In this document: positions 11,014-32,133 of the stretch, one piece after another
Position numbering within the stretch: the stretch's first letter is position 1
Layout: each line of letters opens with the position of its first letter
DNA from: Lepidodermella squamata
Taxonomy: Eukaryota > Animalia > Gastrotricha
Assembly (NCBI GenBank): GCA_047495785.1
Contig: JBLDXI010000020.1
Coordinates: 248,001-312,000 of the forward strand
Direction: 5' to 3'
Length of the DNA stretch: 64,000 nt
Translations under genes and position numbers: made by a program
Notes under the pieces: generated by a model
Database searches by the model: none
What the model saw: only the letters and a program-made list of their open reading frames with translations
What the model was told of the DNA's origin: nothing

Positions 11014-11451
11014 CCGTAAACTACAGTATAAAGGCCGCGGCGACTAATTTTCCTGATTTTTGAAAAAGAGGCAAAAAGTGCGGCGATTATTTGAGTGCGG
11101 CGATTATTCGAGTGCGGTCTTTATTTCCCTCAATTTTTCAAAACTTGAGTTGTAGCAGGCGTAACAGGTGTAACAAGGGGCTTGCGCCGCCAATTCACGC
11201 GCGGCTATTCGGATAATCCGCCTCCTCGACGTCACCTAGTGAGTATAAAGTAGGTCGGCGTAGCGGTAGGAGTCGCAGTGGGGGTGCCATCTGGCGATTT
11301 GCCTAGGTGGCTGTTGATCACGTGCCTAGGTGCGGCGATTATTCGCGCGCGGCCTTTATTTATGCTGAATTGATGAAAATAGGGCTATTTTGCGGCGATT
11401 ATTCGGGTGCGGTCTTTATTCAGGATGCGGCCTTTATACTGTAGTTTACGG
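11014..11451. mobile_element. MITE, Tc1/mariner superfamily (Tc2/pogo-like CCGTA termini), TA target-site duplication
   Basis: Perfect 25-bp TIRs CCGTAAACTACAGTATAAAGGCCGC / GCGGCCTTTATACTGTAGTTTACGG flanked by TA (11012-13, 11452-53). Internal subterminal repeats TGCGGCGATTATTCG...GCGGTCTTTATT occur near both ends. No ORF. Confidence 0.92.
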
Positions 11452-11460
11452 TACATGCAG

Positions 11461-14400
11461 TTAAAGTGCTTGATTAGCTGTTCCAGGAAGCAGCCATTCA
11501 ACGTTAGGGGCTGTTTGCACAAAAATACTTTTGTTCGGTGAAAGCACGTCCGTGATGTCCGAAAGGGACAATTGAGCCGACGAATCGAACGCCGGTCCAG
11601 AAGTCTGTGCAGCAGACGAAATTTTCAAGCGCGGCAAGTTGACGAACCCGGCGAGCAACGGAACAAATGAAATCGGCAACGAGATGGTTGAGCCAGAAAT
11701 GAGTGTGATGTTGACGTCATGTGGACCAGAAATAACCATCGACGAATTCGGTCCAGAGTTCCCCGCGACAGACGGAGGCAGAATAGAAGCTCGTAGGCTC
11801 AACGTTGAATTTGACATGTTCTTGACCAAGTAACTTATTGCGCAAGACTTGTACAAAACAGCCCGAGGCGGAACTCTTGCGGCTCGAACAATTACTGATG
11901 GAATTTGCACAGGGTATTCAGGCAAGGATAGCACCAGAGGAACAGTATGCGAATCGGCGGATCCTTTACGCCGCCAGTTAAGCACGATTTGACCGAGAGA
12001 AACAGCCGCTGGTTGGTTTGGAATAGGGGCTTCAATAGAAGGCAGATTGAAGGCTTCGACGAAGGATGTACCGGGTCGAAGGTGCCTCGGCCAAGCGCAC
12101 TCACTGTTCGACGCGGCACACTCCTGCATAGGAAAATCTGTGCTCTTCAGCTTCATCGTAACAAGCTCCAAGTCATGAGGCGACGAACTGCAAAGTTTTA
12201 CCGACAGAATGCTGCGTCGATGTGGGCAATAAGCTGAAGATGCAGCAAGCGTGTCAAAATCTAGCAGGTTGGCTGCGGATAATGACAGGGGAACGATTAC
12301 TGGAAGTGAAAAAGAAAGTCGCACAACTTCGACGACGGCATCATCAATTGACTTCATAGATTCGCAGCGAAGCTGGAGAGATATGTTCAGAACGTCTTGG
12401 GCGGACTGCTTCACGAAAAATGCTTTCAGTGTAAGCTCAGAAGACGGAGAAACAGATGGAATTTTCACCAAAAGATGGTCACTAAGTGAATTGAAGTCAT
12501 TCTGCCCAACGGCTAGTAAACAGGAGCGAGATGCCGAAGAGGAGGAAGATGAAGAAATAAGAACGTCCAATACCATTTCGGCAGTCGCGACATCAGCGCT
12601 TACATTTCTCACTTTTACATGGACTGGATAATGCTCTCCAACTAGAGCTGGCGAAGCGGCCTGGTCAACACTGAGTTCAACATTAGCCTGCCTGGGTTTC
12701 AAACTGCAAAGAAATGGCGATGCAGTTATCAAAGCTGTCGACTGAGATGCCGCGGCAAGCGTTGACGAGGATGCATGGGTGATCCATTTAGGCGGCTGGT
12801 TGCGTTGACGGAGCTTTGAAAATTCTCGCCCGGTCAACGGGTAGCTGGGAAGCGGCGACTGTGACGACGGCAAAGAAGTTGGAGCTGGCTCGTCTCCAAT
12901 GCTCCAGTTGAGCCGAAGAATACCAGATTTGTTATTGGTTACATCGGTAACTTTAACATCCACACACCAGCCAGAAATTGCGACAAAGGCCTCAGCCATC
13001 TGCTCTCCTGTAGGATCGCCGCCACTGCCGACGCCGGCTGCAGCTGCAACGACCCGGTTTGCATCCTCCTTATTCAGCTCGCACGTGAATTCGCGCGTAT
13101 CACATGAATCCAATGCAATGGTAGACGGTTCGTCCAATCGGAAGCAGTTAGCTTTGACGTCAGCGACTTTACTAGTCGCACGAGTCAACGATGCAACGTT
13201 TCCACCTGTCGTCTTGGCTTTGTAATAATGATAAAAGTTAAGATTGATGCCCGCCGACATGATTTCAAACAAGTATTTATTCGCATCCAAATCAGCCGCT
13301 GACCGCCTGATGTAGAGCCGAACGTTAGGAATTTGATCAAGAGTGGCAGATGACGTCGGGAAATGGCTCCAAGCCTGAATCAGACCACCGCTATTGCCCA
13401 GAACACTCACGTCTACATTCAAATGTCTGTCAACGTCAGTAGCGCTTTTAACATGACCGTTCCAAGATTTGACCAGACTTTTCGCAAACAGTTTTTGCTG
13501 ACGTTCGCCGATTTCAGAGCGAGTAACCAGAGCGACAAGAGCAGCTATGGCAGATTCCTGGTTTTCACCGGGAATGGCCGCAAGCTCGAAGCAAATGGAC
13601 GCCAATTCTTGTTCGTAGTCGACGTCAAACTCGTCTTCTGAGCCATTTGATCCAATTCTTGGACATTCGAGCTGACGGAGGAGTGCGACTTTCAGCAAAT
13701 CTGACCACTGGTCTTTCCGATACTCGGCTACAACATTTTTGAGCAGAGATAGTGCCACCCCAGCGTTGGGAGGTACCTTCTCATAGGTATAAACTAGCTC
13801 ATTGGCGGTTTCCCATGACAGCCGAGTACACATGCGTGAAGAGCCTAATTTTCGAAAATGAACGCTGGCTGACGACAGCAGTTGAGTAACAATCCCGGAA
13901 TGGTCGACCGAGGTACGCTCTATTTGCTGTAAATTAGCGATTCCGACAGCTTCGGTGACTGCATCTGGTGGCTCAAGCGATTGGTAGCCGGGACGCCAGG
14001 CCCTCTGGCCATAGTACTCATTGACTAAGACACCATTCGCTGCATCCCCGCTCGGAAGAGTCAGTTGTGGTATTTGACCTTCCATAACAACGGCACCATT
14101 GGCCAGAATCGTACCAGCTCTCGGCAACTGAGGACTAGGCGCCGATAAAATCGCCATGCGACGTTCACGCGTCAACATCGCCGCTTGATGATAATAAACA
14201 CCCGGGTGCTGACTAATCGAAGCCGTGAAACCAGCTGAACGAACAGCTTCCGCAAATAAATCGGCATACATCCGGTATTGACTAGCCAGCCAGGCATAGT
14301 GTTCAAACGCCAACTCTGGCTGGCCCATTCGTGGCCGTAGCCAGTCGACAAGTTTTCGGAAATGTAACTCAGCATCGCGCTGAGACGCATTGCTACCAGG

Positions 14401-15427
14401 CATTAGTGTTAGCGCCCAGATTTTGTATGATATGAACCCCGCCAAGATTTTAATTTCATGCAAATTATAATCCGTTGCTCGGACATCCATAAGATGCGCG
14501 AATGCTTGTCGGTAGTTTCTCAAAGCAGCTTGAATGCCATCGGGCGGCCGTACAAATTCACTGAGAAATCCAGTCTTAAAATGATGTCGTACGAATAGCA
14601 GCTGATGAGTGGTTTTATTCAGAAATTCTCTATGATCCTTCACTTTTCGAATCTCCATCTGAAATTAAACATGATGATTAAAATACGTAAAATCGCGCAT
14701 TGATAATTCTTACCACATAATAATTTTGAGCAAGTTCGAAAAGCCGTGATTCTAGCTTGACGCAACATCCTTGAAGCTGCTCGTTGTTTTGAAGGATGAA
14801 AAGAGAAGTTTGTAATTGCAATCCACACGCGGCGCAAAGCGAAGCGCATCGCTCTTCAGAGATCGCATCGCCTCCAGGTGGAAGAGCGGTGCCTTCTTGG
14901 ATGACAACCAGCACGATTTTTGTGCTTCTACCGGCTAAATTAGTTTGAATCGCTCGAACCAGTGATTGACACTCGCCTTGCTTCTCTCGCCATTGTGGAT
15001 CCTACGTTAGTATACAAGATAAATTATATGCGCTATACTCAAATGTTGAATCAAATACCGCAATCCAGTCAAGGTTATAAAATAGCACAACAACAGCTGG
15101 AACTTCGGATAGATGTTTGCGCATCCAGTAGGTCTTCAAGACTCCCTTCGGTACGTACCATTCATAGGAAGACTTTTTGGGTTTCGCCTTGGGGTACTCG
15201 TAATCGAGAGGCCGGACGACGTAATTAATAGGTGAGCGATCTGACCTTTTGTCGCTCATAAGAATGTCGGATATTGACTTATGAGCCGGATTGTGTGTTG
15301 TATCGAGTCCAGTCAACACAACACATGGCATCGGCTTGACTAGTAGTTCTGATGGTGGGAAATCTAGGTGATTTGACTGGCCCGAGCCTTCGAAAGATTG
15401 GCTCATCGAATTAGGCAGCGATGCCAT
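11461..15427 (-). CDS. TRAPPC11: Trafficking protein particle complex subunit 11 (foie gras/gryzun), 3 exons
   Basis: LTGLDTTHNPAH, SYEWYVPKGVLKTYWMRKHLSEVPAVVVLF, LLFVRHHFKTGFLSE, EIKILAGFISYK, LAFEHYAWLASQY, QHPGVYYHQAA, YYGQRAWRPG. Two short 5' introns, then one 3.2-kb exon. Confidence 0.96.
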
Positions 15428-15620
15428 CACAAATAAATTATATCACTAGAATCAAACATAAAATTAATAGACAGTTGCCTTGATTTAACATCAGTTGGGT
15501 CATAAAAAATTCAGCCGATAGCCTATCTCATCTTGAAAACCAATGATCACTTAACGAGATTTCAAACGAATAGTTACAGAATAGTCACCGAAAATTCACG
15601 GAGATTGTGAAAATCACCAA

Positions 15621-17834
15621 TCAGTCGGCATGTTCACGATTTCGCGCAGAATCGTTCCCATTTGAGCTTTGATTGAAATCATTCAGGCCTTTGCCCTGAG
15701 CCAAACCTTGAACATGTGAAACTATCGCGGATAAGAAAGTTCTGAGTCCGATATAAAGCATTGCGACAAAGAAAAAGCCCGTAGATGAAGACATCAAATA
15801 TGCCAGGAAGAGGAAACCGGCCAAAACTCCAAGTTCACGGCGATCTGCAAGCCATCGAAGTCGGGCGGATTTGCAAATAGCACCGGCTCGGCCGCTAGTT
15901 GGAATCAAACCGTGCGATGAGGCGAAATTCCCTAACAAGTATTGCAATCGCAGCACAATAGGGATATCGGTGCTACGAAAATCAGGCTCTCCGGGAGCTT
16001 TGGGCTCTCCCCCTCGGGCAAATGACGAAAATGATTGTTGACGCTCTGGCAAACGGCGGAACTTTGGAATACGGCCACCACTTTCTTTGTTGCGATCAGC
16101 GCTAGGTGCGCAAAACGACGGGGTTTTATTCATCGTATCATTCAGACAACTCATTTCGTCGACAGCACCGCTCAAGAACGCATTGCTCAGCTGAGTTTTA
16201 GCATTCTTCAACATGTCTTTAGTCACGCCCGAGCATGAAGGGATAGTGGTCTCAATAATCGCTGTTAACTGCTTCACCGCTGCGACAACCGACTGGGAGG
16301 CAAGATTGAACTGTGCTTGAGCGTTGCGGTGGAGCGCCGCTGGGGTCATGGACGGCGCGGAAGCGTTGAGCGCCGTGTGATGATTAGACGGGGTCAATGA
16401 CAAGCGAATCAGAAGTTTTGCCAAGTTATCGGTATCTGTTTTCACGAAATAAGCTACTGTTCCATTAATAGAATAAAAACCAACCTGGAGCACCACCAAA
16501 AACCTTTGCTAGTCGGTTTAGCGCAGCTGCATAGGCAGGACAGGCTACGTTAGCACGAGTGAGATGCAAAAGCATTGGCAAAAGCAGCGTTTCCGAATAG
16601 AAAACTGTATTTTCTGAAACGAAGAGATCCCAAACCGCTAAGTTTTGATTATTAGCTCCCTGGCTGAGTGTTTTGGATGCACGCCATGGAAGCACAACAG
16701 CACGCCAGCATGACACCACGAAGCCGAAAGAGGTATTCTGAAATTATTAATATAATGAATGACAAGATTATTTGCTCTAATAATTACCAAAGGCCAATGA
16801 GTAGCGCAGCTATGCAGAAACGCGAGGAGCGGTTGTTTAAGAGAAGTAAACGTCGTTTGACGCACCGCAGATGGATTTTGACTGCACCACTCGTCAGCGA
16901 CATTAGAGAAGTAGCGCTTAAGAAATCTCCGAACAAAATGTAAGATGACCGTGGGTGGTAATGCGACAGCAGCAAACGAAATGGAAGAAGAATCCAACGG
17001 TGATGCGTAAGGTGCCAGCCAGAAGTCAGCAACAGATTGTATGTAGAGACGAGCGAGGTCAGCAATTAAAGATCGACTCGTGACAAGCGTAGTTCCAGGG
17101 GGTTGACGAGCATTTGATAGAAGGTATTCGCAATATTCGTCGATGAGCTCAGAGTAAATACAAGAAGGAACAGGGAAGTTTGCTGCCTTATTGGAAGAAT
17201 TAGTGATGGAAGGATACGCACCCGATTCTGACTTGTTAAGCAAATCGGTCACATCAGGAACCACCAAATATGAAATTAAACGTAGGATGAAGTAATGCGG
17301 AACCGGCAAAGTTATCATGCAACTTTGCTCAGTAGTGGATGAATTGAATTCAAAATAACGGGCTTGTGGTCGATAGCCCACATCAGAGGGCACCTTGCGC
17401 ATGATGGTAGCGACGCCAGTCGCAATGCGAACTGAGTCTGATTGGGCAAGTTTGGGATCAAACGCAACAGAAACCCAAGCATCCGCAGATTGCCTCAGAG
17501 AAGTAAATAAAACGCCTTGTGTTGATAGAAATCGCATGATTGCAGGAGTTTCTGACTTGGAACGACCGACAGATCCCCAAGAAGAAGAGGCCATTTGTGA
17601 AAGAGCTGCTGGTCCACTAACTAATGGCCAGTGGTTATTTTCGGTGGTAGTCGGTCCAACGGTTCCTTGCCGTTTCATCCATGTTGTATCAAAAATCTGT
17701 AAAAAGGCGTTTTATGAAAGCGCTTACAGAGAGACTTAGTTACTTGCCTCTTCTACCAATCGGGCTAGCCATATCGGCGACATCAGCATGCTTCCCTTGC
17801 ATAACTCATTGATTCGATCTTCCAGAGAACCCAT
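15621..17834 (-). CDS. SMPD4: Sphingomyelin phosphodiesterase 4 (neutral sphingomyelinase 3), 4 exons
   Basis: IWLARLVEEIFD, IYSELIDEYCEYLL, LLAFLHSCATHWPL|NTSFGFVVSCWRAVVLPWR, WDLFVSENTVFY, PDFRSTDIPIVLRL, RLRWLADRR, then a C-terminal membrane anchor; the motif order matches SMPD4. Predicted start ATG 17834; first intron GC-AG 17747-17697. Confidence 0.85.
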
Positions 17835-19225
17835 GGGTCAAGAATCACCGTCAAGAGGTTAATGACGTCTAAAGAAGAGAAACCGATATGAGCACCTGAA
17901 TAAAAATGCGATTCTCCACAAGAATGGCAATCGCTAAGTTTCCAGGAGACAAGAAGGAAGCAGGGAATCAAGGGATCGCAAGCTTGCAACAACTTAGCGC
18001 GCAACTCAAAAGTGAGGTACGCGGGGCGGCAAGATGTCAAGGTCGTTAAGAGTCACAGTCGACATAAGGCCTAAAAAAGATACGATTAAAAGCTTTCTTT
18101 TTCATTTAATGATCAAGCAGCAATACGAAAGGAAAGAAAAGAAAAATAAGGAAAAACCGGAAAACTCGGTTAACATCTCCGTGGTACACTGGATCATCGT
18201 ACCTCATCAGCGCACTGCGGCACTGGCTTCCCGCTCTTCAATTCTGACTTGCCAGTCTGGCTTTCAGGTGTTCCTCCTCCTACAAGCAGTACAGAAACAC
18301 GCTGCCTCCTTTAGAAAGAAAGCTTCAGGTTGGTCTTTTCTGAGCTGCGAAATCGCAGAATCGCGAACCGCTTTTCGCCCTGTGGAGGACGCTTTGCGCG
18401 ATCGGTACGTAGGTGGTTGGCGGTTGTGAATAGCTAAGATTGTTATTCGCATTGCGATCGAGTTCCGCTGCATAGCCCGATTATAAAAATTCTCCAGGGC
18501 TACCTTTTAGCCCTCAAAACGGACTGTGGCGCTCCATCAAAGTCAAGTAGGTCACATTTGTGGACATGTATCGCCCTGACTTCGACGGGAGCAGATCGAT
18601 GTAATCTATTTCAATAGACCAATTGGTCGATTCTGAGGCTCACCCAGTTTGCTATGTGTATACTTTAAATGTCAGAATAAAAATTAAGTCTGTCTTTGGG
18701 GGCGTTGGGCGTTGGCTTCCAATTATCGATTTGTCAACACCCGACTACCCAAGTCAGGTAGTGGCGCGTTACATGTTACACCAGGCACATTTTCATATCC
18801 GCAACTGTCTGGCTCTGTAAAACCAGTCTTTTTATTAGCTATCTTGCTAGGACGTGTAGTTCATTAGGCTTTGCTAAGTAACGGGAAACCTGGATTGCCA
18901 TGACTAGATTACCTGCATGAAATACACCACGCCATTTTTACATTGTATACCTTCAATGTTTGAGAAAGCCCAGCAACCTCGGACTTTCAATTTTTCAATT
19001 GTTAAGCAATTGATTAAAAAGCGCTCTCGTTTTATATATGTTATTGCTATCTACTGTTTTTCTCATGCACACTATGTATCGTTATCCGGGATTCCAAACA
19101 GCTTTTGGAATCTGGCGCTCAGTCGCTCGTCGCCTTGATATTATTGATTTGATCTGCAGTCGTTGTCATTGCTTTCCATTTTAGCACTAACGTAAGCAGT
19201 GATTTTTGATATTAGATTTCCTCAA

Positions 19226-21056
19226 ATGGAGCGGTTGGATGATTCGCCGAGGTTTAATTTGGATTCCAATTTGAATGTGGATGGCAAAATTCATCAGCCT
19301 GTTTTACGCGTTCTACGATTTTCTTCGCAATATGGTTCAGACTTGCCGCCTGAGCCTGCTGATGGATACGGGCCGTTGTCAGCTTCTTATTGCTTGAAAA
19401 ATCTGGAAGGGGAGCCAGTTGTTTATCCTCAATATGGCGATGCCACTAGGGCTGCTGTCTTCAGACATTACGGTGGTTACTGGTCCTCTGGCAATTCATT
19501 ACTTGATCTCAACGACGAATTTGCTTGTACAAGGAGGGTTGTTGAACCTGATGATTTTGTCGATCTATTTTATCGCGAAGCTGTTTATCCGGAGAGTTTG
19601 AAAATTTACGAAACATTCAACTGTGGCCATATTTTTCGAATTTGGGCGGGACAAGCCACTGCGCCATCAGCCATTGTCGAATCTTGGTCTTTGCTGTGGA
19701 TCCGTACCTCTCCTTTGGAAATGCGCGTTAATGATTGGGAAAATCCCGAAGCCGTCATCTTCGAACCTTGCATTAAAAAATTGGACATCCCCGTTAACGT
19801 TATTCGATTGGAGATGTTCACTTTGGGCGCAGATTACTATCCAGAGCTTGATTCAGTAGTTTTGATCGGCTATCCTGATAATATTCATCACGGGGAGACT
19901 GAACCCGATGAGAATCTAATTCCTCGTTTTAACATGTTAAATATCAATGAATCACCCAATTCGGATTGTTTCAGCCTGGACCAACTACCTCCGGAAATAT
20001 TAAGATATATGGTGACCGAATGCTGTGACGAAAAGAGCAAGCTATATATCGCCTTCGCGTTATCAGCTACATGTCGCAAAATTCGTAATGCATTGAATGA
20101 TCCTAATTTATTTAGTACTATCGACTTGCAGACGCACGCTCCCCGGTGTGTCAACCAAGAGGGACTAGACTTCATTATCGCGAGGTCGAGATTTTTGAAA
20201 AAACTTCGATTGTCTTGGCTACCTGGTTCAAAGTATGACTCAGCGTTGTTGGGATTTTGTCTCCAACCTGTTCAAACGTTAACAGTTTTTTGCGCGCAAT
20301 CATGTCCATTTGTGAACGATGAATTGTTGGAATTGTTGTGCACAAATCAACCCTACCTTCAATGCCTTGATTTGGCCAGCTGTCGTCATGTTACGCCTCG
20401 CGGATTTTCAGCCTTGTCGAATCTTCGTAGACTGAAGCGTTTGTCATTGTATCGGACTTTGATCGATCAGTATACAGTTAGGCTGGTATTGAGTTCAATG
20501 CGTAGCCTTGAAGCTGTCAACTTGGGTGCGCTAACTTTGCTGACAAACTGCGACGCTGTTTGCGCGCTCCTGGCGGAATGTTGTCCCGATTCGTTGCGAG
20601 CAATTGATTTTTGGCGCGCTGGCGCCACCCTGACGAATCGTGGTTTAAAAGAGCTTGTCACTTGCTGCAGGAACCTAGAGGAGCTTGACATTGGATGGTG
20701 CCCGAAAGTTGATTGCTTCGCTTATATATCCGAAATGTGCCCTCGAATGCGTCGAGTGATGGCTACTGCTAATCGTTCAGTCTCTGACACTGACCTGGAG
20801 TTATTCGCTCAGCGTCTGCCTAACCTGCAACAGTTGGACCTACTGGGTTCTGGTGTTTCTCTGGAGGTTTGAAATAGAAAATTAAAGCATAAATAAGGCG
20901 AAAATTCATTCAATTTCACAGGCTGTTGTTGCCTTGCTTTCAGCATGTCGCCAAATGAATTATTTGGACATATCGTACTGTGGACTAGAGAACAGTGAAC
21001 TTGACCAGCTGCGGCAAAGTTTTCCGAATGTGCATATTCCCAGCCCTTCGGCATGA
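19226..21056 (+). CDS. FBXL4: F-box/LRR-repeat protein 4, 2 exons
   Basis: VLRFSSQYGS, SYCLKNLEGEPVVYPQYGD, AVYPESLKIYETFNCG, DYYPELDSVVLIG, F-box LDQLPPEIL, then LRRs (IDFWRA, LEELDIGWC, LQQLDLLG). One intron ~20868-20921; stop TGA 21054-21056. Confidence 0.93.
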
Positions 21057-21197
21057 CACGGTTTCGCTGCCCTTGTTATAACACTGCTGATTTATTTATT
21101 TAAGCAATTTGCAATCTTCTGTGATCATTTGCCCGGAATTTTATACGTCATATATTAATGATGAGTAATTTTTTATGCTTTTTAGATCGCTTTTGAA

Positions 21198-22736
21198 ATG
21201 TTGAGTTCGGATCTCAAGCATCTGGTCTACTTTTCAATAGCGACTCGTGTTGCTGTATTTGTGATTCAGTTGGTAGCAAATACGCTGATCCCGGATCACA
21301 ATGCCGATGCATTCAAGCCCATGAATGTTACTCAATTCGGATTTATAGCCGATAAATTGATGGGAGGTTTGGCGAGATGGGATGCTCAACATTTTCTATT
21401 CGTCGCTAAAAACGGCTATATTCTGGAGACATCGCTGGCTTTCTTCCCTCTTCTACCTCTGTTGGCGAGGTTCATCTCAGGGTGTCTGCTCATTTTATTG
21501 GCACCGATTTTGTCACAAGAGGCGCTGTTGTTACTTGCTATGCTGGCTATTAATTGTTATTGTTTCGTGCAATCGACGATTTTGCACTACAGATTTGCTA
21601 GGGACTTGCTGAAGTCACATCAGTTGTCGATGCTGGTCGCCCTCTTATTTTGCATTAACCCGGCCAGTATTTTCATGACAGCGGCTTACACGGAGTCGCT
21701 TTACCACATGTTAACCATGTTCGGCCTGGTTTATCTGCGATCGGAAAAACCGGCACTGGCAGCTTTGTGTTTTTGCCTCTCAGCCGCTTGCCGATCGAAT
21801 GGCATGACTAATGTGATGTACTTGATCCTGTACATTTTGAACGCAAATTACGTCAAGTTAGCAGAGGCATTGGAGCCGAAGAAGGGTCGAAATGTGCTCA
21901 AAAGGGTGTTTTCAGCCGCTTGGATCATCAGCGACTCGCTGGCCTTGTTCGCGTTCCTAGTGGCAGCTTGCATCGCCCCGTATTTCTTATTTCAATACTA
22001 CGCCTATGCAGTTCATTGCTCACATGCTATATCGATAAATCCATCACCTGCTGCCGTGAACTTCGCGAGATTGAACGATTTACGCCTCATGTCGGATGAG
22101 CCGCCGTCAGAATGGTGCAACAATACGGTACCGTTCTCTTATTCATACCTTCAGCAGCACTATTGGGGCGTTGGGTTTTTGTCCTACTTCCAAGTCAAAC
22201 AAATTCCGAACTTCGTCCTGGCAACCCCCGTCATCTTGCTGGCGGGTAACTGCTTATTCCGCGAATTCCGCGAACTTTACGTTCGTATTCAAGCCGCGTG
22301 GCAGGGCGGCTCTTTACGCCTGCTGGCCATGTCATATACGTCTATGCTGATGATGCTACTTGCCTTTCATCTAGCCTTCATTCTGCTGTTTGGTGTTTTC
22401 GTTGCTAACGTACAAATCGTCACACGACTGCTGTTTTCGACTGGTCCTTTGCTGTACTGGTTTGTTGCTCGCATTATTCTCACCGACGCGATGGCTGTGC
22501 CTGACTTGCGGGCGATTTTCATCGATCAGCAGCAGCTGGAGACTGGACCTGGACCTCAGCCGCCGCTGCGGGAGAAATCACGTGGTTTCATGGAAAGTCT
22601 CATGAGAAATCCTCTCATCATGATATTGGCTCATTGGCACCTATTGTCGACGAGGACTCGCCTTATTTTGGGCTACTTCTTGACGTACTTCTTTGTCGGA
22701 ACTGTTTTGTTCTCAAATTTTTATCCATGGACCTGA
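21198..22736 (+). CDS. PIGV: GPI mannosyltransferase 2, intronless CDS
   Basis: LIPDHNADAF, GLARWDAQHFLFVAKNGY, LAFFPLLP, INPASIFMTAAYTES, RSNG, YWGVGFLSYFQVKQIPNFVLA, C-terminal NFYPWT. Confidence 0.97.
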   Translation: MLSSDLKHLVYFSIATRVAVFVIQLVANTLIPDHNADAFKPMNVTQFGFIADKLMGGLARWDAQHFLFVAKNGYILETSLAFFPLLPLLARFISGCLLILLAPILSQEALLLLAMLAINCYCFVQSTILHYRFARDLLKSHQLSMLVALLFCINPASIFMTAAYTESLYHMLTMFGLVYLRSEKPALAALCFCLSAACRSNGMTNVMYLILYILNANYVKLAEALEPKKGRNVLKRVFSAAWIISDSLALFAFLVAACIAPYFLFQYYAYAVHCSHAISINPSPAAVNFARLNDLRLMSDEPPSEWCNNTVPFSYSYLQQHYWGVGFLSYFQVKQIPNFVLATPVILLAGNCLFREFRELYVRIQAAWQGGSLRLLAMSYTSMLMMLLAFHLAFILLFGVFVANVQIVTRLLFSTGPLLYWFVARIILTDAMAVPDLRAIFIDQQQLETGPGPQPPLREKSRGFMESLMRNPLIMILAHWHLLSTRTRLILGYFLTYFFVGTVLFSNFYPWT

Positions 22737-22937
22737 AAGGTCGCATGTTAACTTTGAAAATAGCAATCAAATGACATATACGTGTTTCGTTCCCCGTAAA
22801 ATCGAATTTCAGGTAGCTATTTGAGTGCGTTTCTATTTTTCAGTTTCATATAATGATCATCGCGTTTTTTCCTCATGAATATAAACGGAAGCTACCCTCA
22901 ATACACTCTTTTTCTGATTTTAGGTTTTTTGAGAAAA

Positions 22938-25900
22938 ATGTTAGCCTCCTTAAAAATGACGGAGGCCCGCTCAAAGCGGATGGCTTCGGAAACCACCCAG
23001 GCTGTTTCCGGTCAACAAGCTGCGCCGGCGCAGGGACAGAAGCGAATGCGTTTCACTGGGAGAGTTCGGCCTCTAGGCGAACTTCTGGATAGCTTTCCAA
23101 CCGATGAACACCTTCTTCATGCTTTGACGAGGCCAGCGACTGCCGAAGATTACGGTGGAGCGGAGTCGATGGCACAGCAGCTTTTGAACCTGGCCTTGGT
23201 GCCGCCGGCAACTGGCCAGTCAGCCGCTCAGCAACATCGGCCCGCAGCTGAAATCGCCCTTCGAGCCCTGCGGCTCATCTCGTCATCGCATTCTCCCCTT
23301 TTCACCGCTTCCATCATTCAAACTATTTTCGAGCGTTGTCTTAGCCATGCTCAATCAATCGCCAGTGTCGACGCAACATCGATTCTCTGTTCCAATTTGC
23401 TGGCGATTTGCGCTGAATGTGCTAGAACCGTACCCTCTCTTCAGCAACAGCTTATTTCTGCCCTAGTAGAGATACTCAGTCGGTCAGATATAGACTTTCT
23501 CCTCCTTACAGAAAGTCTCCGCATTCTCGCACGATTTTTCGCTCGAGAGTGTGCTTCGAGACATCTTGCTCGCATATGTGCTATATGCGTAGATATGCTG
23601 ATGATAAGCGACGTGCGAATTCGACTCGCCGCGTTGGATCTGCTCAATGAAATGATAGGGCACTGCGGCCGCAATCCATCCGTTGTCTCGCAAATTCCAA
23701 TCGAAGCGCTGTACAAGTCGGCGATTCTCGGCATCGATGACACGTTCGAAGATATCCGACTCGCAGGGCTGAATCTTATCGCGATTCTCGCCGCGCTTCA
23801 GCCTGATATGAAAATCGACGACGAGGGCGCCGTAGACGCGTCATCGAGGGGTTCGTCCAGCTTAAATACCCTGTCGAATGTCGTCTTTGGACGGTTATGC
23901 CACGCCTGTGCTAGTGACCGTACAATTCGAGTGCGTGCCCTTGCTGCCTCCTTAATCGGCCGTATACCCGGGGTTTCGGAAAATTTCATCGAGCAGTCGC
24001 TAGATAAACGCACAATCGCGTCGATGCGAGTTGACAACGGTCAGGACCAGCATCAACAACGGCGGGCGGGTTACGGCGTTGCAGTTGGCGACTACGAGGT
24101 CGATGCGGTTTCATTGATTTCTCAGAGTGCCTGCGGGGCGCTGGTCCACGCGCTTGAAGATGAATTCTACGAAGTCAGAGAAGCCGGCATTGAGTCACTC
24201 TCTCGAATGATAACCCCAGAGCGTATCACCTTTTCGCGACAGGGTCAGGATTTTCTGATAGATGCCTTGGGCGATGAGGTTGAGCAGGTTGTGTTATGCG
24301 CCTTACGAGCCTTGGCTCGAGCTGGATCGCAGCTGGACTTCACCGAAAAGCATGTAACCGCTATCCTCTTCACGCTCAAGGTCGCTTCATCGGCCGTTCG
24401 GCGTCAAGTTCATCGCACTCTGTCGAGTATCTCAATGCGCTCGAGAACATCTCATCTTGCGTGCTGTCTGGCTTTATTCGACAACATTCGGCTATTTCCG
24501 TCTGATGTCGACTCAATATGGATGTGCGCCGCCCATTTCGGTCGCAATCATCCGCAGCTCACCCGGGCTAATTTGTCCCGTCTTCTCGAGTTGCATCCTA
24601 TGTTTTTAAGCCAGGAGGCCAAAATGGACGACCCAACGTATATTGCCAAGTTGCTGATTGTTTTCGCGGCTGCTGGGAGTGACGGTAACTCGTCCCAGGT
24701 AAGATTCATCTTTCTAACACCCCTGGTAATAATTTTCATTTTACAATTTTAAAGATAATGCGAAGTCTTCCCGAACACGTGCGATCACATTATGGGTACA
24801 TTTGCGCCCGATTTCGCCATCTTTTGCACGAATCTGGTCCGTTGATTGAGCCTAGTGCGAATGAAGATGATGTCCCATCGACAAGTCTGGTCCGTGCTAG
24901 GGGTGAAACTTCAGCGGTCGCCTCATCTCAGCTGCGTCAGGTTTTGGTTAGGCACATCGAGTTACTTCGAAATTCACTTCAAACATCGCCAACGCTGGAT
25001 CGAAGCATCGACTTTGCTACTAGTCTCGTTCGCCAGTCGATGAGCGGGCCAGGTGATGCCAACACTGTCATAGTTCTAGCTAGCGGCAGTTCACAAGTCG
25101 ACCTTGCCGACCATTTCGCACCCCAATGGCGATTCCTGATGGGTCTCATTCAGTGCTTGTTTGATTATAGTCGCATAAATCGAGTCGCAGCGTCTGCTTC
25201 TTTCACCAATAACGCTGGGCAGGCCAGATCGATATTGACGAACGAACTGCGGCCGAGGATAATCCGTTTGCTAAACTGCTTTCTCCCCGTCCCGCCTAGT
25301 TTCGCTGCTTTCATGCGGTTGATCGATTTGGCAGCTTGTTCGAATGCCGAAGTAGAACCAGCCCAGTTGCACCGGGTGGCTTTGATGGCGAGGCGATCTC
25401 TTGAAGCAAGTGGCCAGGTCGTACCTGGGTCAGTTGAACGGGTGTTGCTACACGCGGCGAGCTGTTTGAATGAGAATACAGCAGCTGGATCGAATCTCGC
25501 ACCGCGCCACGGCCAGCTAGATGAAGCACTGGTATCCACCCTAATGTCGTGCCTGTCAAACGAAGATCTGTTGTCTCGATCCCAAGCTATGACAGAGTTA
25601 CGCGTCGAAATTCGCGAACCGATCCCGCTTGTTTCTGAACCAGCCGCTGAGGTCCGCTTTGTCTCGCATTTCGGCGCAACTGTTCCGTTGCGGTTCGTTG
25701 TGAGCGGGTTTAACAGTCAGCAGGTCGCAGCCTCCATGCCTCGTCTTGTCGTTCGAGTCACGTATCCGAACCAACGCTCCGATCTGCTGGTGCCACTTTC
25801 GAATGAAATTGAGGTGATCGGCGACGACTTGGACTCGACGAACAGTGCAGTTACGATCTCCGTATCTATGCGCATCCCGATCGCTTTCACTGCTTCAACT

Positions 25901-26068
25901 GGCCCCTGCCATGCCAGGGTATCAATTTTGCTGTCGTCCGCCGACGACGGCTTAGTTGATCTAACGTCACTTGAAAATGGTGGCGGTGGCTCGCTACAAC
26001 TGTTGGTGCTCTCGAAACCTGCCAAGGGCGAAATGCAAAAGCGCTTGCTTTCCGTTGCTCAACCTTGA
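22938..26068 (+). CDS. INTS4: Integrator complex subunit 4 (HEAT repeats), 2 exons
   Basis: DDTFEDIR, VRALAASLIG, FIEQSLDKR, SACGALVHALEDEFYEVREA, QDFLIDALGDEVEQV, FGRNHP, HPMFLSQEAKMDDPTYIAKLLIVF|IMRSLPEHVRSHYGY. Intron 24699-24754. Start may be 22938, 22956 or 22980. AATAAA at 26125-26130. Confidence 0.93.
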
Positions 26069-26947
26069 AACATGCGGTGATAGAGTATAAAGTATATCTT
26101 CATGAATATATAAATGATTTTTGAAATAAATTTTGATGTTGGTTTTGTACTTACGATTTTGCATCTATCCGACTCATAACGTGTAACTCACTGCCTGTGA
26201 TTGTAATTGTAACCAGTATGTTGAAAATGTAGCGAAATACTGGTAAGGGATATAGTAAGCTAATGGTTTCGTTTCTGCGAAGCAAGCCGAATATAAATAT
26301 GCTGAATTAACCATTGACCATGCAATGCCGGCATCTTCTTTCTAGGTTTCAGGAGGGTTAAAATAGTGACTCAAATCATCGATGGAAGAAGGAAACGATG
26401 TAGGTAAGAGATTAAATACAGGTACATAAACTGCGAAAAACTGCAAAATAGGCCAGGTTGACAGGAAAGCAATCATTCGGAAGATAATTCCATGCATTTA
26501 TCGTTTGTACCTAGCAGTGGCAGGGTTATCTATGTCATATTTTGAGGATCCTTGACATTTTGATTGAAGGCGGAGTTAGTACGGATCTCGCTTTGCAGCG
26601 TAACTAGTGGAACTCGTGGCGCCTGATCGGAGGATTCCGAGGCGGGAACGGATTTGAGCCGTATCGCTTATGCAATCATGATTTTGTAGTAGTTTTTGTA
26701 GTAGGTGCGATTGTTCCCACGAAACGCCGGAGCCTCAGCGCTGAAAGGTCCGCGCCAGCCAAAGCGACAACATCTGTCTTGCACAAAATCGAGCAGATAC
26801 CCAAGTTTCCCCGGTGGAGGTGTGAAAGAGTCCGATGTCAGATCATAATTTTTATCAGAATCGACCAGCAATACGTCTTGAGTGCGTTGAGCATAGCTAC
26901 TTCTTTGATAAGATGGGGCGGAGGCTGATCAGCTGAGTGACAATCTA

Positions 26948-27344
26948 TTGGCCAGGGCAACTTTCTTCCTGACACATTGCTCCATAGACAAAGCAGAATA
27001 CAACGTGACAAACTTGATCAACAAACCATCGTCCGATCACAAAACCAGGCTTAGCAGCTCTGATGGCGTCGAAATCCCTCGACAAGCTCACCATCTCAGC
27101 TTTCGATTTCGTGCTGCTAGCAAGTGGAATGACTGCTGCTAGATCTTCCGAAAACCCGAAGATCCTCAGAGACGAACTCCTGAAAGTACTGCTGAAAGCA
27201 GAATACGTGGACGATTTCGTCTTCACAAAGAAGAGGTAACTCGCCACCTTAGCTCGACGCGCCCATCTACGTCCGTTGGATGGAAGACCGCCTTTTAGTG
27301 CGAATCCAACGCTATTATACATACATACATACATACATACATAC
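26948..27344 (+). mobile_element. 3' end of a CR1/L2-group LINE with a (TACA)n tail
   Basis: HKTRLSSSDGVEIP...SFRFRAASKWN resembles the TR...IP...SF..RA...WN C-terminus of CR1/L2/Crack ORF2. A short 3' UTR and a tetranucleotide tail follow, as typical of this group. Confidence 0.65.
27318..27344 (+). repeat. (TACA)6-7 microsatellite
   Basis: tacatacatacatacatacatacatac read directly. Confidence 0.95.
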
Positions 27345-28117
27345 TTCTAGTCGATTCACCAAAATAAATACCCGTAATTTGAAATCCCTGATGCTCTATT
27401 ACTACGAGGCCATAAACGCATATCGATTGGCTATATTAATTCAAAATCCTAGCAATTAGCGAAAAGCATCGTAGAAACGGAAAAGTGAATCCATCATGAC
27501 AATAAATATTTCGGAAGAACCGTTAGAAAGCCCGAGAAATGGCAAACCTGGATTCGTAAAATTCGCGCTGCATTGTTTCATTATGAAGGAAAGATATAAC
27601 TATAAAAATGATTACGTTTACTGTATGAACTTTTTGAACTTTTTGAACAATGCCCTTGACAGAGGCTATCCGCTCGAAAACCTCATAATCTTTTATTTTC
27701 GCTCGATTGATTGCTTGATTTTGGCCTTTTCTGACGGTACCGGCCACTCGGCATTTTCCGTATCGGTAAAAACGCAACTATAATAAGCTAAATTCTATCA
27801 TTATTGCTCTGGATTTCTCTCGTTCTTTGATCGCTGCTCTTTCAATGTGACCCTTGATGTACACAAAATTCTTTGTATGTTAATCAATAAAACTCGAATA
27901 TTTAAACGTTCTTGAACTTTTACTGTTTCAAACACGTGGAATTTACACGAGCGGTTTTGAGCTCTTTCATCGCAAAACAAAATCAGTCACTTTTGAATGC
28001 TGAAGCATTGATAAAAACCGTAATAATTGCCTTCGAACGGCGGAGCCACATTTCAGTCATTGCTTTCATGAAGCACACGTAATTTTTATAAACAGACAAT
28101 AATAGAAAGAGCGTTTT

Positions 28118-31100
28118 TCATTGAAGATGGTCAGCCAATCGACACAAATTCCGCACAGGCAACAGGCGAATTTCCTCGTCGTCGGTCTGCACGACACCGT
28201 CGGCGTTGACTTCCTCGACGGAAATCAGCGTACCAGTGATGCCGGCGTTATCGCCAACCACGATTTTGACACGCTCGCCCGTTTGCGGCATGATTGGCCG
28301 CAGGCAGCTAGGAGGTACGTTGAGCAGGTCGTCGCCGAAGCTGACGTGCACCTGGCCGGAAACGCCGTCGATGTTGACGACGTGGCCTTCCCGCCCGGCC
28401 AGATCCGGCACTTCCGAGTTGTTGGCGACTCGCACTTTGATATCACGGCAGATCCAGCTTCCGTCCGACGATGCTGGCATTTCGTCCTCGCCGCCGTACG
28501 CGTCAGCACCCGGCGCTTCGGGTGTCATTGGGGCGCTGACCGAGGGTGACGGGATGCTGCCGAATGGAGATTCGCTCGGGGCAGCGTATGGCGATGGAGC
28601 CGCCGGGCTGGGGGCTGCAGGGCTGTATGCGTCCTGCATGTTTGAAGTAGGCGCTACACTGAACACGCCTGGGGTGGTCGGCCCGACATATCCGCTTGAA
28701 TAGGGACCCCTGCTGGAGCCAGGTGATTGTCCAGTGTCTTGATCGTCATTATCCATATCGAAATCGTAGTTGTAACTGATGAAAAGAGGACAAATAATTA
28801 TAAAAATGAGAATCCTCCTTAAATCCTCCTTAAAAATATCGCTATGGTCATACTAAGCATTGATGATCAAAATCAAGATGATTGGAGCAAAAATCGATTT
28901 TGCAGAAAAAGTGACAAGCATTAAGACTTCGTTTTGGGACTCTCTAATATCCAATATCCCAGATGATCAAATAATTTCGTATAAATTTTGAAATTGGTAT
29001 TTTCTCAAATTGATTTCCTCTGAAATTACCTGATATGTAACATGCGACCCCTCTTAAATCAATGAAAAATAGCTCGAAATTTGCAGGAAAAAATGAATCA
29101 CCTCGCCCACTTTTGGTTCAAATTTTAGAATTGCTTGAACAAACGCTGATTTTTAAACTTCAAAAACATGTTTTTGTGCAGAGATACCCCTCCTTACCGT
29201 AATTGCTAGCCAAATAGTTGGTGAAAAACAACGAAATTCAACATACTGAGCAGGGGTGTTGCCATGTTTCGGATCCCAAACACTGCTGCCACCCGCACCA
29301 GCCGGGGTTCGGCTACCCGATGCATCGTGCATCGGCGTGCGGCCGCCAGCATCGCCATACATCGGCGTCCTGCCGCCCAAGCCGTACATTGGAGTGCGGC
29401 CGCCATCGCCAGCTCCATACATCGGCGTCTTGCCGCCATCCATGCCATAGGCAGGGGTTTGCGAGCCATAAGCTGGCGTCCTGCCGTACTCTGAAACCGC
29501 ATTTCCAGACGTGCCAGGTCCGCGACCCTGTTGGCCGACGACTTCAATACGAGTTCGATCGACGGAAATAATTTTCGGATATGAATGCAGTTCAACACGC
29601 GCCAACGCATCTGTCGCGTCCTTCACGATACCGACCAAATTTTTGAACGGACCTTGAATAATGCGAACAGTCTGGCCGATGATTCGTCGATCGCGCTGAT
29701 TTCGATCCCGGCCGTAAACAGCAGCCGCCGGGCTTTGATTTGCACCAACTGCCGTTTTGTTCTGCTGGAAAGACGAACCGAAATGATCGGGGCGAGGGCT
29801 GTTGAGCGATGGCGACCGCATAGAGGCGTACGACCCGAAAGCTGAACCGCCACTTTGAGTAAGCTGACTCGCCTTGGGAGTACCCATCAGCTCTAATTGC
29901 TTCGATCGGCAAGTGAAAGCACCACCATTTTCAAGATGAAGCTTCGACTGAAGGAAAACAAAACCTCGAAACATGTATTTCACTGTCCCATTCAAGCCTT
30001 TATGAGGTCCGTCCAAAACCCGGCAGGTATCGCCCAGCTGGACGGATTGGCCTTTATTATCGTAGGTCATGATACTTTTCGCGCAATGACGCGATCGAAT
30101 GGCCTGTGGCTTCACCAACTCCAGCTTGCCATGCATTGTCAATACTTGAAGCTGGTCGCGTTCAATTCGCACGATCACACCAACTGTTTGCGGGTCAAGT
30201 TCGACGAAATCGAAGAACTGAAACTGACCGGTCGAATCAACACCGGGTGCAACTTCTCGGCATAATTGAAGGTCCCGGGGGCGGACTTTCAATTCGTGCA
30301 TTGAAAGATCGGAAAACAAAACACATTGATCGTCCTCGACTCGGACTACAAGACCGGTGTCCCCCTCGTAAGACCCGGACATTACCCTAACGTGATCACC
30401 GGCTTTGAAAAATTTGCGCAGTTCGCTAGCGACGAATTCGAGCGGGTCGGTCAAATCTTTGTATTTCGGCAAAACAACAACTTTGTCACCCTCAACAGTT
30501 TTCACGACACCGACCAAGTGTTTTAGATCACCCTCAATTACTTCCACGTAATCACCGGGTACAAATCGCTGAGAGGCGTCACCACCCTTAGCAACCTGGT
30601 TTCGAGCAAGAGTCTTTGTAAGGTGAGCGACAAGTTCGGCAGTACCGGCAAGGGCTGGGTTCGCGGCTACCCCGGCAACTTGACCGGTCTCGAAGCGATC
30701 AAGTTCAGCCAGGGAGGGCTTGACACCCTCAGATAACACAGCATTCATTGGAAAGTTTTTGTAAATGAAACCTTTGTCGTCGAAACGATTGCCAAACCAA
30801 ACCAGGTAGTTCCCTTCGCGCGTAATCACAGCATTTCCACCGGAGACGCGTTTGAGTAACTCTTCGCTGAAAAGTTTCATCGGTGGGCGTTTGAAAGCTT
30901 TCGTTTTCCCTCCTTCAAAATGCTTTCGTTTCGCCTCGGCTACTTCTGCCGCGTCAATACCACGGAAGCGAGCAGCATAGTCAATGCGGGGAACTAACTT
31001 GATCACAACACTGTCTTCGTTCGGCTCGATTTCTTCAATCTGGCCAAGATCATCTTTGTAGATACCACGTTTAAGACGGACCCACGAGCCGCGTTTGATA

Positions 31101-32053
31101 GGCGCAACGTCTCTCACGACCTTCATGACATCAGGCATTTCGGCAAGGGGGACGAGATGCTGCTTGAAAGCGCCGAGCTTGAGCGAGCCGATACCTTCGA
31201 TCGCTTGCTTAATGTGCGCCTGTTTGAAGGCTTCGATGTACAGATAGCCTTTCAAGCCTTCTTTCACGACGATGGACTTGATTTGCAAGGGTTCGATTTC
31301 AGTCGAACCCTGAAGTGCTATGTATTTTTGCATCAGTTTGATGGCAGTTTGTTTCTCTTCTCCGATGCGGCATCTCACTAGCCATAAATTAGGATCAGCC
31401 GATGTTGGTAAACGACTTTGCTGAGTAACATCTTCTGACAGTGTTTCGCCTGTATCGCCAAGCCGCTCCAAAGCCGCAGTTCTGCTGTATTTATCGCGGA
31501 AATATTGGTTGACATTCTCAGCATCAAGACTATTTAATAGAAACAAATGTGGTAAATTATGAACAGACTTTTAGGTCAGAGGCTTACTTGTCGGAATCGA
31601 GCAGAGCTCCGATCCCAGACCCGAATTTACGAGAACTTCGGCTTGGCAACTGTGGAGCTTTAGCGGCACTTTTACCGCCTTTGAGAGCCTCCTGGTATCG
31701 CTTCTTAAGATCAGCCGGAATAGCTTCAGATTCGATCGGCTCATCTTCGTCAGAATCAGTGTCGACGTCTGGAACAAATTTTTAACAGAGAATATATACA
31801 GTTTTATCCGAATGAAAAAAACTAACCGGCCTCAGCTATGACGAAAGGATTCGCTTTATGTCGTTTACGGCGAGGTTCGGCCTCCTCCTCTTCCTCTTCC
31901 TCTTCATCTTCAACCTCTTCTTCCTAGACGAGGAATAAGTCTTACTTGATAGAATTAAAAAAAAATACAAACCTCGTCGTCTTCTACTTCCTCTCCGCTA
32001 CCCAATGCCTCTTCTCCCCCTTCATCTTCCATTTCAGCTTCGGAATCAGACAT
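28118..32053 (-). CDS. SUPT5H: Transcription elongation factor SPT5 (DSIF large subunit), 5 exons
   Basis: Acidic N-terminus MSDSEAE; NGN domain [15 protein letters not shown]...[21 protein letters not shown]; multiple KOW motifs; CTR repeats [23 protein letters not shown]; C-terminal KOWs. Introns 31972-31924, 31826-31769, 31587-31530, 29246-28776. Confidence 0.98.
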
Positions 32054-32133
32054 CTTACAGATAACTGTTAAAGATGATAACTAAAAGAAGATGCGAAGTG
32101 TAAAGTAGTATAAGATCAAGTATCAGTATTCGG

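What the first reader, a model, noticed from the sequence alone, without database searches (positions are those of the whole stretch)
11461..26130. Two back-to-back candidate operons: SMPD4-TRAPPC11 (-) and FBXL4-PIGV-INTS4 (+), five genes from one divergent region
Seen: stop-to-ATG gaps are only 193 nt (SMPD4 to TRAPPC11), 141 nt (FBXL4 to PIGV) and 201 nt (PIGV to INTS4). None of the three gaps contains a sense-strand AATAAA, while AATAAA follows the last gene of each run (26125; 11420 and 10891 on -). Each downstream ATG has a T-rich acceptor just before it (TTCTAG 18 nt, TTTTTAG 12 nt, ATTTTAG 14 nt). Known: this layout characterises eukaryotic operons resolved by spliced-leader trans-splicing in nematodes, tunicates and flatworms. 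Inference: both runs are polycistronic and start in the 1.4-kb divergent interval 17835-19225. If the host lineage is not known to use operons, this would be a new instance.
Basis: partly seen in the sequence, partly recalled or inferred. Interest (0 to 1): 0.8.

Follow-up and report, generated by a model that had tools for sequence, protein, structure and literature searches.

The report
Two back-to-back candidate animal operons
Five housekeeping genes of a compact, unidentified bilaterian genome lie in two tightly packed runs pointing away from one shared 1.3-kb region; the layout fits operons cut up by spliced-leader trans-splicing, a known mechanism, but the leader itself was not seen.

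Summary
The gaps are 193, 141 and 201 nt. None has a sense-strand AATAAA. A T-rich ...TAG lies 18, 12 and 14 nt before the three downstream start codons. Other intergenic distances in the window are 0.5-7 kb.

New support for the operon reading:
- RNA contigs show the upstream mRNAs running to about 22-40 nt from the next gene's acceptor.
- The SMPD4-like mRNA contig stops exactly on the AG of a strong acceptor 36 nt before its ATG, with no local donor.
- The same motif precedes 6 of 8 start codons checked, against about 6% expected by chance.
- A metagenomic relative (67-79% protein identity) keeps PIGV then INTS4 156 nt apart while both flanks are rearranged. Its pre-ATG motif equals a cis 3' splice site of its own.

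Against or missing:
- No leader letters appear in any contig.
- No transcript spanning two genes was shown.
- FBXL4-PIGV adjacency is not conserved in the relative.
- The same sites could be TA(+1)G initiators.
- The host lineage stayed unresolved.

Other first-stage notes flag operon and SL-RNA signatures elsewhere in this genome, so this looks genome-wide.

Verdict: probable SL-type operons (about 0.55), a new member of a known kind, of moderate interest.

The parts
11461..15427 (-). TRAPPC11 coding region, the downstream gene of the minus run. The large exon is 11461-14658 and the first exon starts at ATG 15427. The short introns between about 14659 and 15010 were not resolved.
   Evidence: Pfam Foie-gras_1 and Gryzun-like. 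By my recollection of human TRAPPC11, the N-terminal exon reads like it (not tested). No RNA contig of run X1 covers exon 1, which is not a finding because filters drop contigs.
11415..11420 (-). AATAAA 41 nt after the TRAPPC11 stop codon, the end of the minus run
15428..15620 (-). SMPD4-like to TRAPPC11 gap, 193 nt, 42% T on the sense strand. It has no AATAAA, only AATCAA at 15485-15480. SMPD4 3' UTR RNA reaches about 15469.
   Evidence: The RNA end is computed from the bin depths and variant positions.
15446..15451 (-). TTCTAG acceptor-like site. The exon would start at 15445, 18 nt before the TRAPPC11 ATG.
15621..17834 (-). SMPD4-like coding region, 687 aa, the first gene of the minus run. 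Exons are 17834-17748, 17696-16788, 16737-16485 and 16435-15621. One intron is GC..AG.
   Evidence: Three introns are seen as joints in RNA contigs of X1 and X3. The spliced model has no internal stop. The SMPD4 name rests only on a 0.87 atlas lead.
17869..17882 (-). TTTCTCTTCTTTAG acceptor-like site 36 nt before the SMPD4-like ATG. The X1 mRNA contig (depth 114) ends at 17870, on the A of this AG.
   Evidence: Depth is 0 at 17871-18099, with no joint to an upstream exon and no loose end.
17871..19184 (.). Divergent interval, unique sequence. T/A skew flips sign at about 18200. Low-level RNA (depth 4-20) covers about 18290-19250 on the FBXL4 side.
19176..19184 (+). CCATTTTAG acceptor-like site 41 nt before the FBXL4-like ATG
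19226..21056 (+). FBXL4-like coding region, 591 aa, F-box/LRR, the first gene of the plus run. Exons are 19226-20866 and 20922-21056.
   Evidence: LRR Pfam hits. The 55-nt intron is seen as an RNA joint. The model is clean.
21057..21197 (+). FBXL4-like to PIGV gap, 141 nt, 44% T, with no AATAAA and no one-mismatch variant. FBXL4 3' UTR RNA reaches 21128 (X1) and 21144 (X3).
21179..21185 (+). TTTTTAG acceptor-like site. The exon would start at 21186, 12 nt before the PIGV ATG.
21198..22736 (+). PIGV (GPI mannosyltransferase 2), 512 aa, single exon
   Evidence: Pfam PF04188, E 1e-75. Homologues. The start codon aligns with the relative's.
22737..22937 (+). PIGV to INTS4 gap, 201 nt, with no AATAAA. 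AATATAAA at 22878 lies about 40 nt before the acceptor. The in-frame ATG at 22875 is not conserved in the relative.
22917..22923 (+). ATTTTAG acceptor-like site. The exon would start at 22924, 14 nt before the INTS4 ATG.
22938..26068 (+). INTS4, 1024 aa. Exons are 22938-24698 and 24755-26068.
   Evidence: Pfam HEAT and INTS4_C. The N-terminus MLASLK is shared with the relative. The model is clean.
26125..26130 (+). AATAAA 57 nt after the INTS4 stop codon, the end of the plus run. T/A skew is neutral beyond it.

Best explanation
The proposed mechanism is two polycistronic transcription units that start in one bidirectional promoter region near 18.2 kb.

The minus unit carries the SMPD4-like gene and then TRAPPC11. 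The plus unit carries the FBXL4-like gene, then PIGV, then INTS4.

The precursor would be cut into single mRNAs in two steps. The upstream mRNA is cleaved and polyadenylated 20-40 nt before a T-rich ...TAG 3' splice site. A capped spliced leader from a separate SL RNA gene is then trans-spliced onto that site, 12-18 nt before each downstream start codon. The first genes of the two runs, and SPT5 elsewhere in the window, have the same kind of site, so trans-splicing would be general in this genome.

Shown here:
- the tight spacing;
- the motif and its non-random position;
- the extent of the 3' UTRs;
- the spliced-looking 5' end of the SMPD4-like mRNA;
- the conserved PIGV-INTS4 pair.

Inferred, not shown:
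- the leader itself;
- the polycistronic precursor;
- the absence of internal promoters.
For: 1. The gaps are 141-201 nt, against 0.5-7 kb elsewhere in the window.

2. RNA contigs show the FBXL4 3' UTR reaching 21128 and 21144, at most 40 nt before the PIGV AG. The SMPD4 3' UTR reaches about 15469, about 22 nt before the TRAPPC11 AG. That leaves no room for a conventional promoter.

3. The X1 SMPD4 contig (depth 114) ends exactly on the AG of TTTCTCTTCTTTAG. Depth upstream is zero and there is no cis joint within 3.4 kb.

4. A pyrimidine tract plus T[TC]TAG lies within 45 nt before 6 of 8 ATGs, against 5.5% expected per 35 nt.

5. In the relative, TGTTTTGTAGAGTTT sits 10-15 nt before the ATGs of INTS4 and SPT5. 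TTTTGTAG is also the 3' splice site of its INTS4 cis intron.

6. The relative keeps PIGV then INTS4 at 156 nt, with AATAAA about 35 nt before the acceptor, although both flanks differ from the window.

7. AATAAA lies 33-63 nt after the stop in 5 loosely spaced genes and in 0 of 3 internal genes.

8. T/A skew domains run 11.5-18.2 kb (minus sense) and 18.2-26.2 kb (plus sense). They flip at about 18200 and are neutral outside.

9. Low-level RNA lies upstream of the FBXL4 site only, which looks like an outron.

10. Unchecked first-stage notes report SL-RNA-like genes in the rDNA spacer and operon signatures in other windows of this genome.
Against: - No contig of the RNA runs carries non-genomic letters at 17868, 15445 or 21186. 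Only 1 of 35 X1 contigs had any unaligned part, and that part is a local fold-back. Contigs can lose such tips, so this is not decisive.
- No RNA was seen over 17871-18099, where an SMPD4 outron would lie.
- TRAPPC11 exon 1 has no X1 contig, while SMPD4 stands at depth 114. The tool warns that dips are not findings.
- FBXL4-PIGV adjacency is absent in the relative, where PIGV heads its own unit next to WDR35.
- The five pre-ATG sites end in TAG, while the five cis introns end in CAG or AAG. The two classes therefore differ in this species.
- No SL RNA gene lies in the window.
Confidence: 0.55

Rival explanations
1. Each gene is an independent unit with its own compact promoter. The T-rich ...TA(+1)G element is an initiator and transcription starts on its A, giving 5' UTRs of 12-41 nt. 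The gaps are combined terminator-promoter regions, as in other compact genomes.
For: - The X1 SMPD4 contig ends on the A of TAG (17870), not on the first exon base (17868). It has no leader letters and no RNA upstream.
- TTAGAC fits YYANWY.
- The pre-ATG sites are all TAG, while cis acceptors are CAG or AAG.
- PIGV stands alone at the head of a unit in the relative.
- Apparent RNA levels differ strongly between SMPD4 and TRAPPC11.
Against: - The upstream mRNA fills all but 22-40 nt of the gap, so the whole promoter would lie inside a transcribed 3' UTR.
- Elsewhere the window is not under strong compaction, with intergenic distances of 0.5-7 kb.
- In the relative the pre-ATG motif is identical to a cis 3' splice site.
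- No metazoan initiator of this form is known to me.
- Internal genes lack the AATAAA that loosely spaced genes carry.
Confidence: 0.25
2. Trans-splicing occurs without operons. The sites are real SL acceptors, but each downstream gene is transcribed from an internal promoter inside the upstream gene's 3' part, giving overlapping units similar to the hybrid operons of C. elegans.
For: - The acceptor evidence is the same as for the best explanation.
- Apparent RNA levels along the runs are unequal.
- FBXL4-PIGV adjacency is evolutionarily recent or unstable.
Against: - Gaps of 141-201 nt with the poly(A) site 20-40 nt from the acceptor are the spacing typical of true operons. In C. elegans, internal promoters go with longer spacers (established knowledge, not tested here).
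- The PIGV-INTS4 pair is kept together across rearrangements.
Confidence: 0.12
3. The spacing is chance tight packing and the motifs have no function.
For: The lack of AATAAA is expected by chance, with 0.29 copies expected.
Against: - The motif association has P of about 1e-4 to 1e-6.
- The same architecture is present in the relative.
- An RNA 5' end falls on the motif.
Confidence: 0.05

Closest known systems
Chaetognath operons (Spadella cephaloptera, Paraspadella gotoi)
   Same: Same-strand housekeeping genes lie less than 250 bp apart. The poly(A) site lies a few nt to tens of nt from the downstream acceptor. About half of all genes are trans-spliced, first genes included, and there is no operon-specific leader. 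The genome is rich in tandem duplications (PMC2481426, PMC12460157).
   Different: The host was not shown to be a chaetognath. The published leaders listed in PMC2481426 end in ...AAA, whereas the contig end here suggests a leader ending in AG, if there is one. No leader was seen.
Tunicate operons (Oikopleura dioica, Ciona)
   Same: The genome is compact, introns are about 50 nt (49-56 nt here, against a median of 48-51 in O. dioica, PMC8008620), and telomere-like repeats are TTAGGG-like. The SL gene is linked to 5S rRNA genes. PMC11067885 reports extreme scrambling of gene order in O. dioica. By my recollection, not checked here, intercistronic spacers are very short and gene order within operons is better preserved.
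   Different: In O. dioica the 5S/SL loci lie outside the rDNA array (PMC8008620), while first-stage notes place the SL-like gene inside the rDNA unit here. No O. dioica protein was among the best SPT5 hits. The SPT5 tree does not group the window with tunicates, although the AU test does not reject that grouping (p 0.119).
Caenorhabditis elegans SL2 operons
   Same: The units are polycistronic, with spacers of about 100-200 nt, a T-rich intercistronic region, an acceptor close to the ATG, and enrichment for housekeeping genes.
   Different: C. elegans keeps AAUAAA in the spacer and uses a dedicated SL2. Here the internal genes lack AATAAA, and nothing indicates two leader classes. The telomere-like repeats here are not TTAGGC.
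Kinetoplastid polycistrons
   Same: Internal 3' ends form without AAUAAA, close to a pyrimidine tract and acceptor. That suggests polyadenylation coupled to downstream trans-splicing.
   Different: Kinetoplastid units hold tens of genes, have hardly any cis introns and lack classical promoters. Here the units hold 2-3 genes in an intron-bearing animal genome.

Membership tests
Operon resolved by spliced-leader trans-splicing | Two or more same-strand genes with a short intercistronic distance (typically under 250-1000 nt) | tested here: met
   Gaps are 193, 141 and 201 nt, against 0.5-7 kb elsewhere.
Operon resolved by spliced-leader trans-splicing | Downstream mRNAs carry a common non-genomic leader joined at a 3' splice site upstream of the ATG | tested here: inconclusive
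   Acceptor-like sites are present and non-random. The RNA contigs show no leader letters at 15445 or 21186. Contigs can lose such ends.
Operon resolved by spliced-leader trans-splicing | A polycistronic precursor spans the gap | not testable with these tools
   Only assembled contigs were available, in one call. RNA reaches within 22-40 nt of the acceptors, but spanning molecules cannot be judged.
Operon resolved by spliced-leader trans-splicing | There is no independent promoter or capped TSS in the gaps | not testable with these tools
   No CAGE, ATAC or chromatin data were available. The only indirect argument is that the 3' UTRs fill the gaps.
Operon resolved by spliced-leader trans-splicing | The genome holds an SL RNA gene (leader, splice donor, Sm site) | not tested
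   None lies in the window: Rfam gave 0 hits. Unchecked first-stage notes report SL-RNA-like genes in the rDNA spacer of this genome.
Operon resolved by spliced-leader trans-splicing | The 3' end of the upstream cistron forms inside the gap | tested here: met
   RNA contigs of FBXL4 end at 21128 and 21144, and those of SMPD4 at about 15469, inside the gaps. The signal is non-canonical.
Operon resolved by spliced-leader trans-splicing | Gene adjacency is kept in related species | tested here: inconclusive
   PIGV-INTS4 is kept at 156 nt in a relative with 67-79% protein identity. FBXL4-PIGV is not kept. For SMPD4-TRAPPC11 the test failed, because the relative's contig is only 2.9 kb.

The most novel reading that the evidence does not exclude
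The host may be a long-branch bilaterian from a lineage in which spliced-leader trans-splicing and operons have not been described. No annotated close relative was found, and the only kin are marine-looking metagenome contigs. These back-to-back units would then be part of a further independent origin of animal operons. They would also show internal 3' ends that lack AAUAAA and may be coupled to downstream trans-splicing, as in kinetoplastids.
Probability: 0.2. Interest if true: 0.65.

Novelty: new member of a known kind. Interest (0 to 1): 0.38.

Why it matters
If confirmed, the locus is a compact example of two operons driven from one bidirectional region.

It also shows a clear contrast between internal genes, which lack AATAAA and end 20-40 nt before the next acceptor, and terminal genes, which carry AATAAA 40-60 nt after the stop. 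That contrast would make it possible to test in an animal whether polyadenylation is coupled to downstream trans-splicing.

The value depends on the host. In a chaetognath, tunicate, nematode, flatworm or rotifer this is routine annotation. In another phylum it would add an origin of animal operons.

The signature is reported in many windows of this genome. The useful unit of follow-up is therefore the genome, not this locus.

Tried and rejected
1. I looked for the organism's own transcript contigs in the protein collection, to read their 5' ends. Full-length PIGV and SPT5 queries and a 180-aa PIGV N-terminal query found nothing above 79% identity. The RNA runs are therefore not in that collection.

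2. I tested conservation of SMPD4-TRAPPC11. The relative's TRAPPC11 was found (P0179), but its contig is only 2.9 kb. Two scans of the JGI metagenomes found no relative.

3. Rfam and tRNA scans of the window gave nothing.

4. I tried to identify the host.
   - The best named hits are 33-48% identical and spread over molluscs, amphioxus, hemichordates and vertebrates.
   - The SPT5 tree puts the window and its relative on a very long branch, at an unresolved node among lophotrochozoans, ecdysozoans and deuterostomes.
   - The AU test does not reject a tunicate grouping (p 0.119).
   - The atlas taxa were uninformative.
   - Literature on chaetognaths, Oikopleura, copepods and 2DBD receptors gave leads only.

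5. The nucleotide alignment of the PIGV-INTS4 gap with the relative is not meaningful. The architecture is conserved but the sequence is not.

6. The gaps and the divergent interval were checked as possible repeats or transposons. They are unique sequence.

7. Transcription-coupled T/A skew is weaker than it looks as evidence, because the pooled introns show no skew. I use it only to locate the switch point.

8. I tried to resolve the small TRAPPC11 introns by enumeration. The result was too ambiguous and I dropped it.


Full report
**What is there**

The window is a compact animal genome segment, about 45% GC, with introns of 49-56 nt.

Between 11.4 and 26.1 kb lie five genes in two runs that point away from a unique 1.3-kb interval. 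On the minus strand an SMPD4-like gene is followed by TRAPPC11. On the plus strand an FBXL4-like gene is followed by PIGV and then INTS4.

Gene identities:
- Pfam confirms TRAPPC11 (Foie-gras_1, Gryzun), PIGV (E 1e-75) and INTS4 (HEAT, INTS4_C).
- The FBXL4 name rests on LRR hits only.
- The SMPD4 name rests on a 0.87 atlas lead only.

Spliced models without internal stops give 687, 591, 512 and 1024 aa for the SMPD4-like gene, the FBXL4-like gene, PIGV and INTS4. Four of the introns are seen directly as joints in RNA contigs, one of them GC..AG.

**Check of the observation**

- The absence of AATAAA from the three gaps is expected by chance, with 0.29 copies expected.
- It gains some meaning by contrast. 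Five loosely spaced genes of the window carry AATAAA 33-63 nt after their stop codon, and none of the three internal genes does. The FBXL4-PIGV gap has not even a one-mismatch variant. The contrast has P of about 0.12, so it is a trend.
- The acceptor-like sites are clearly non-random. T[TC]TAG occurs 1.6 times per kb in non-coding DNA, giving P 0.055 for a 35-nt stretch. It precedes all five start codons here, and that of SPT5, by 12-41 nt.
- The gaps of 141-201 nt stand against 0.5-7 kb between other neighbours in the window.

**RNA evidence**

I laid 15300-21299, to cover one junction of each run and both 5' ends.

Run X1, and more weakly X3, are RNA, because their contigs are spliced. X2 is DNA at about 110x.

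- The FBXL4-like 3' UTR reaches 21128 (X1) and 21144 (X3), at most 40 nt before the PIGV AG.
- From bin depths and variant positions, the SMPD4-like 3' UTR reaches about 15469, about 22 nt before the TRAPPC11 AG. The gaps are therefore almost wholly 3' UTR.
- The SMPD4-like mRNA contig (depth 114) ends at 17870, the A of the AG in TTTCTCTTCTTTAG. Depth beyond is zero, and there is no joint to any upstream exon in the 3.4 kb covered.
- Low-level RNA (depth 4-20) covers 18290-19250, upstream of the FBXL4-like site. It resembles an outron.
- No contig carries non-genomic letters at 15445, 17868 or 21186. Contigs lose short branching tips, so this does not exclude a leader, but the leader remains unseen.
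- TRAPPC11 exon 1 has no X1 contig. The tool warns that such dips are not findings.

**Comparative evidence**

The only close relative is an organism in ENA metagenome assemblies, with PIGV 67% and SPT5 73-79% identical.

- There PIGV is followed by INTS4 after 156 nt. AATAAA lies about 35 nt before a TTTTGTAG site, which is 15 nt before the conserved ATG.
- Upstream of PIGV lies WDR35 on the other strand, not FBXL4.
- Downstream of INTS4 comes the forkhead gene, which in the window lies about 15 kb further on, beyond SPT5 and MCM9.
- The pair has thus stayed together across two nearby rearrangements, while FBXL4-PIGV has not.
- The same 15-mer TGTTTTGTAGAGTTT precedes the ATGs of INTS4 and SPT5 in the relative. 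TTTTGTAG is also the 3' splice site of its INTS4 cis intron. This argues that the pre-ATG motifs are splice acceptors.
- SMPD4-TRAPPC11 could not be tested.

**Where the units start**

T/A skew is minus-sense from 11.5 to 18.2 kb and plus-sense from 18.2 to 26.2 kb. It flips within 100 nt at about 18200 and is neutral beyond both terminal AATAAA signals. Pooled introns show no skew, so I use this only as a marker of the switch point.

**Interpretation**

The best reading (0.55) is two SL-type operons from one bidirectional region. Internal 3' ends would form 20-40 nt before trans-splice acceptors and without AAUAAA.

The main rival (0.25) is that the same T-rich TA(+1)G sites are initiators of independent compact promoters. 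It is favoured by three points:
- the contig ends on the A;
- no leader letters were seen;
- the pre-ATG sites end in TAG, while cis introns end in CAG or AAG.

A third reading (0.12) keeps trans-splicing but places internal promoters inside the upstream genes.

**Host and novelty**

The host is a long-branch bilaterian that I could not place.

Its features fit lineages where SL operons are already known, such as chaetognaths and appendicularians (PMC12460157, PMC2481426, PMC8008620):
- introns of about 50 nt;
- TTAGGG-like repeats;
- the tandem gene expansions and SL-like genes beside 5S in the rDNA unit that other first-stage notes report.

None of these lineages was confirmed. The scan has flagged the same signature in several other windows of this genome, so this is a genome-wide trait seen at one locus.

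I file it as a probable new member of a known kind, of moderate interest. There is a 0.2 chance that the lineage is new for operons.

Noticed in passing
window 26069-41726, against L002 5746-7842: In the metagenomic relative, INTS4 is followed after about 2 kb by the forkhead gene. In the window about 15 kb lie between them, holding SPT5, two fold-back elements and MCM9. The relative's SPT5 sits on another contig with different neighbours. The block has been inserted or moved in one lineage.
   Followed up: partly
window 17697-17747 (-): A GC..AG intron of 51 nt in the SMPD4-like gene is supported by an RNA contig joint.
   Followed up: partly
L001 11563-11577 and L004 8824-8838: The identical 15-mer TGTTTTGTAGAGTTT lies 10-15 nt before the start codons of two unrelated genes, INTS4 and SPT5, in the relative. 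The shared part runs 5 nt past the AG, which is more than an acceptor alone would need.
   Followed up: partly
window 18286-19087: Seven low-depth RNA contigs of run X1 fold back on themselves, with joints on opposite strands about 100-125 nt apart. This is seen only in the divergent interval. It is probably a library or assembly artefact of rare transcripts, but I did not explain it.
   Followed up: no
window 19894-19985; also 18170-18243 and 18832-18882: There are dense heterozygous blocks. The first has 8 differences in 92 nt, at half depth in the DNA run X2 and also in the RNA run X1, so both haplotypes are present and expressed across samples labelled as different organisms.
   Followed up: no
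window 62129-62687: Sec6/EXOC3 is followed on the same strand after 560 nt by a zf-HIT gene, whose ATG is preceded by a long pyrimidine tract ending in TTTAATAG, 17 nt upstream. Sec6 has AATAAA 53 nt after its stop. This may be a loosely spaced third unit or two separate genes.
   Followed up: partly
window 32081-32090 (-): SPT5, the head of a divergent pair, has CTTCTTTTAG 27 nt before its conserved ATG at 32053. The pre-ATG acceptor-like site is therefore not limited to downstream genes.
   Followed up: yes
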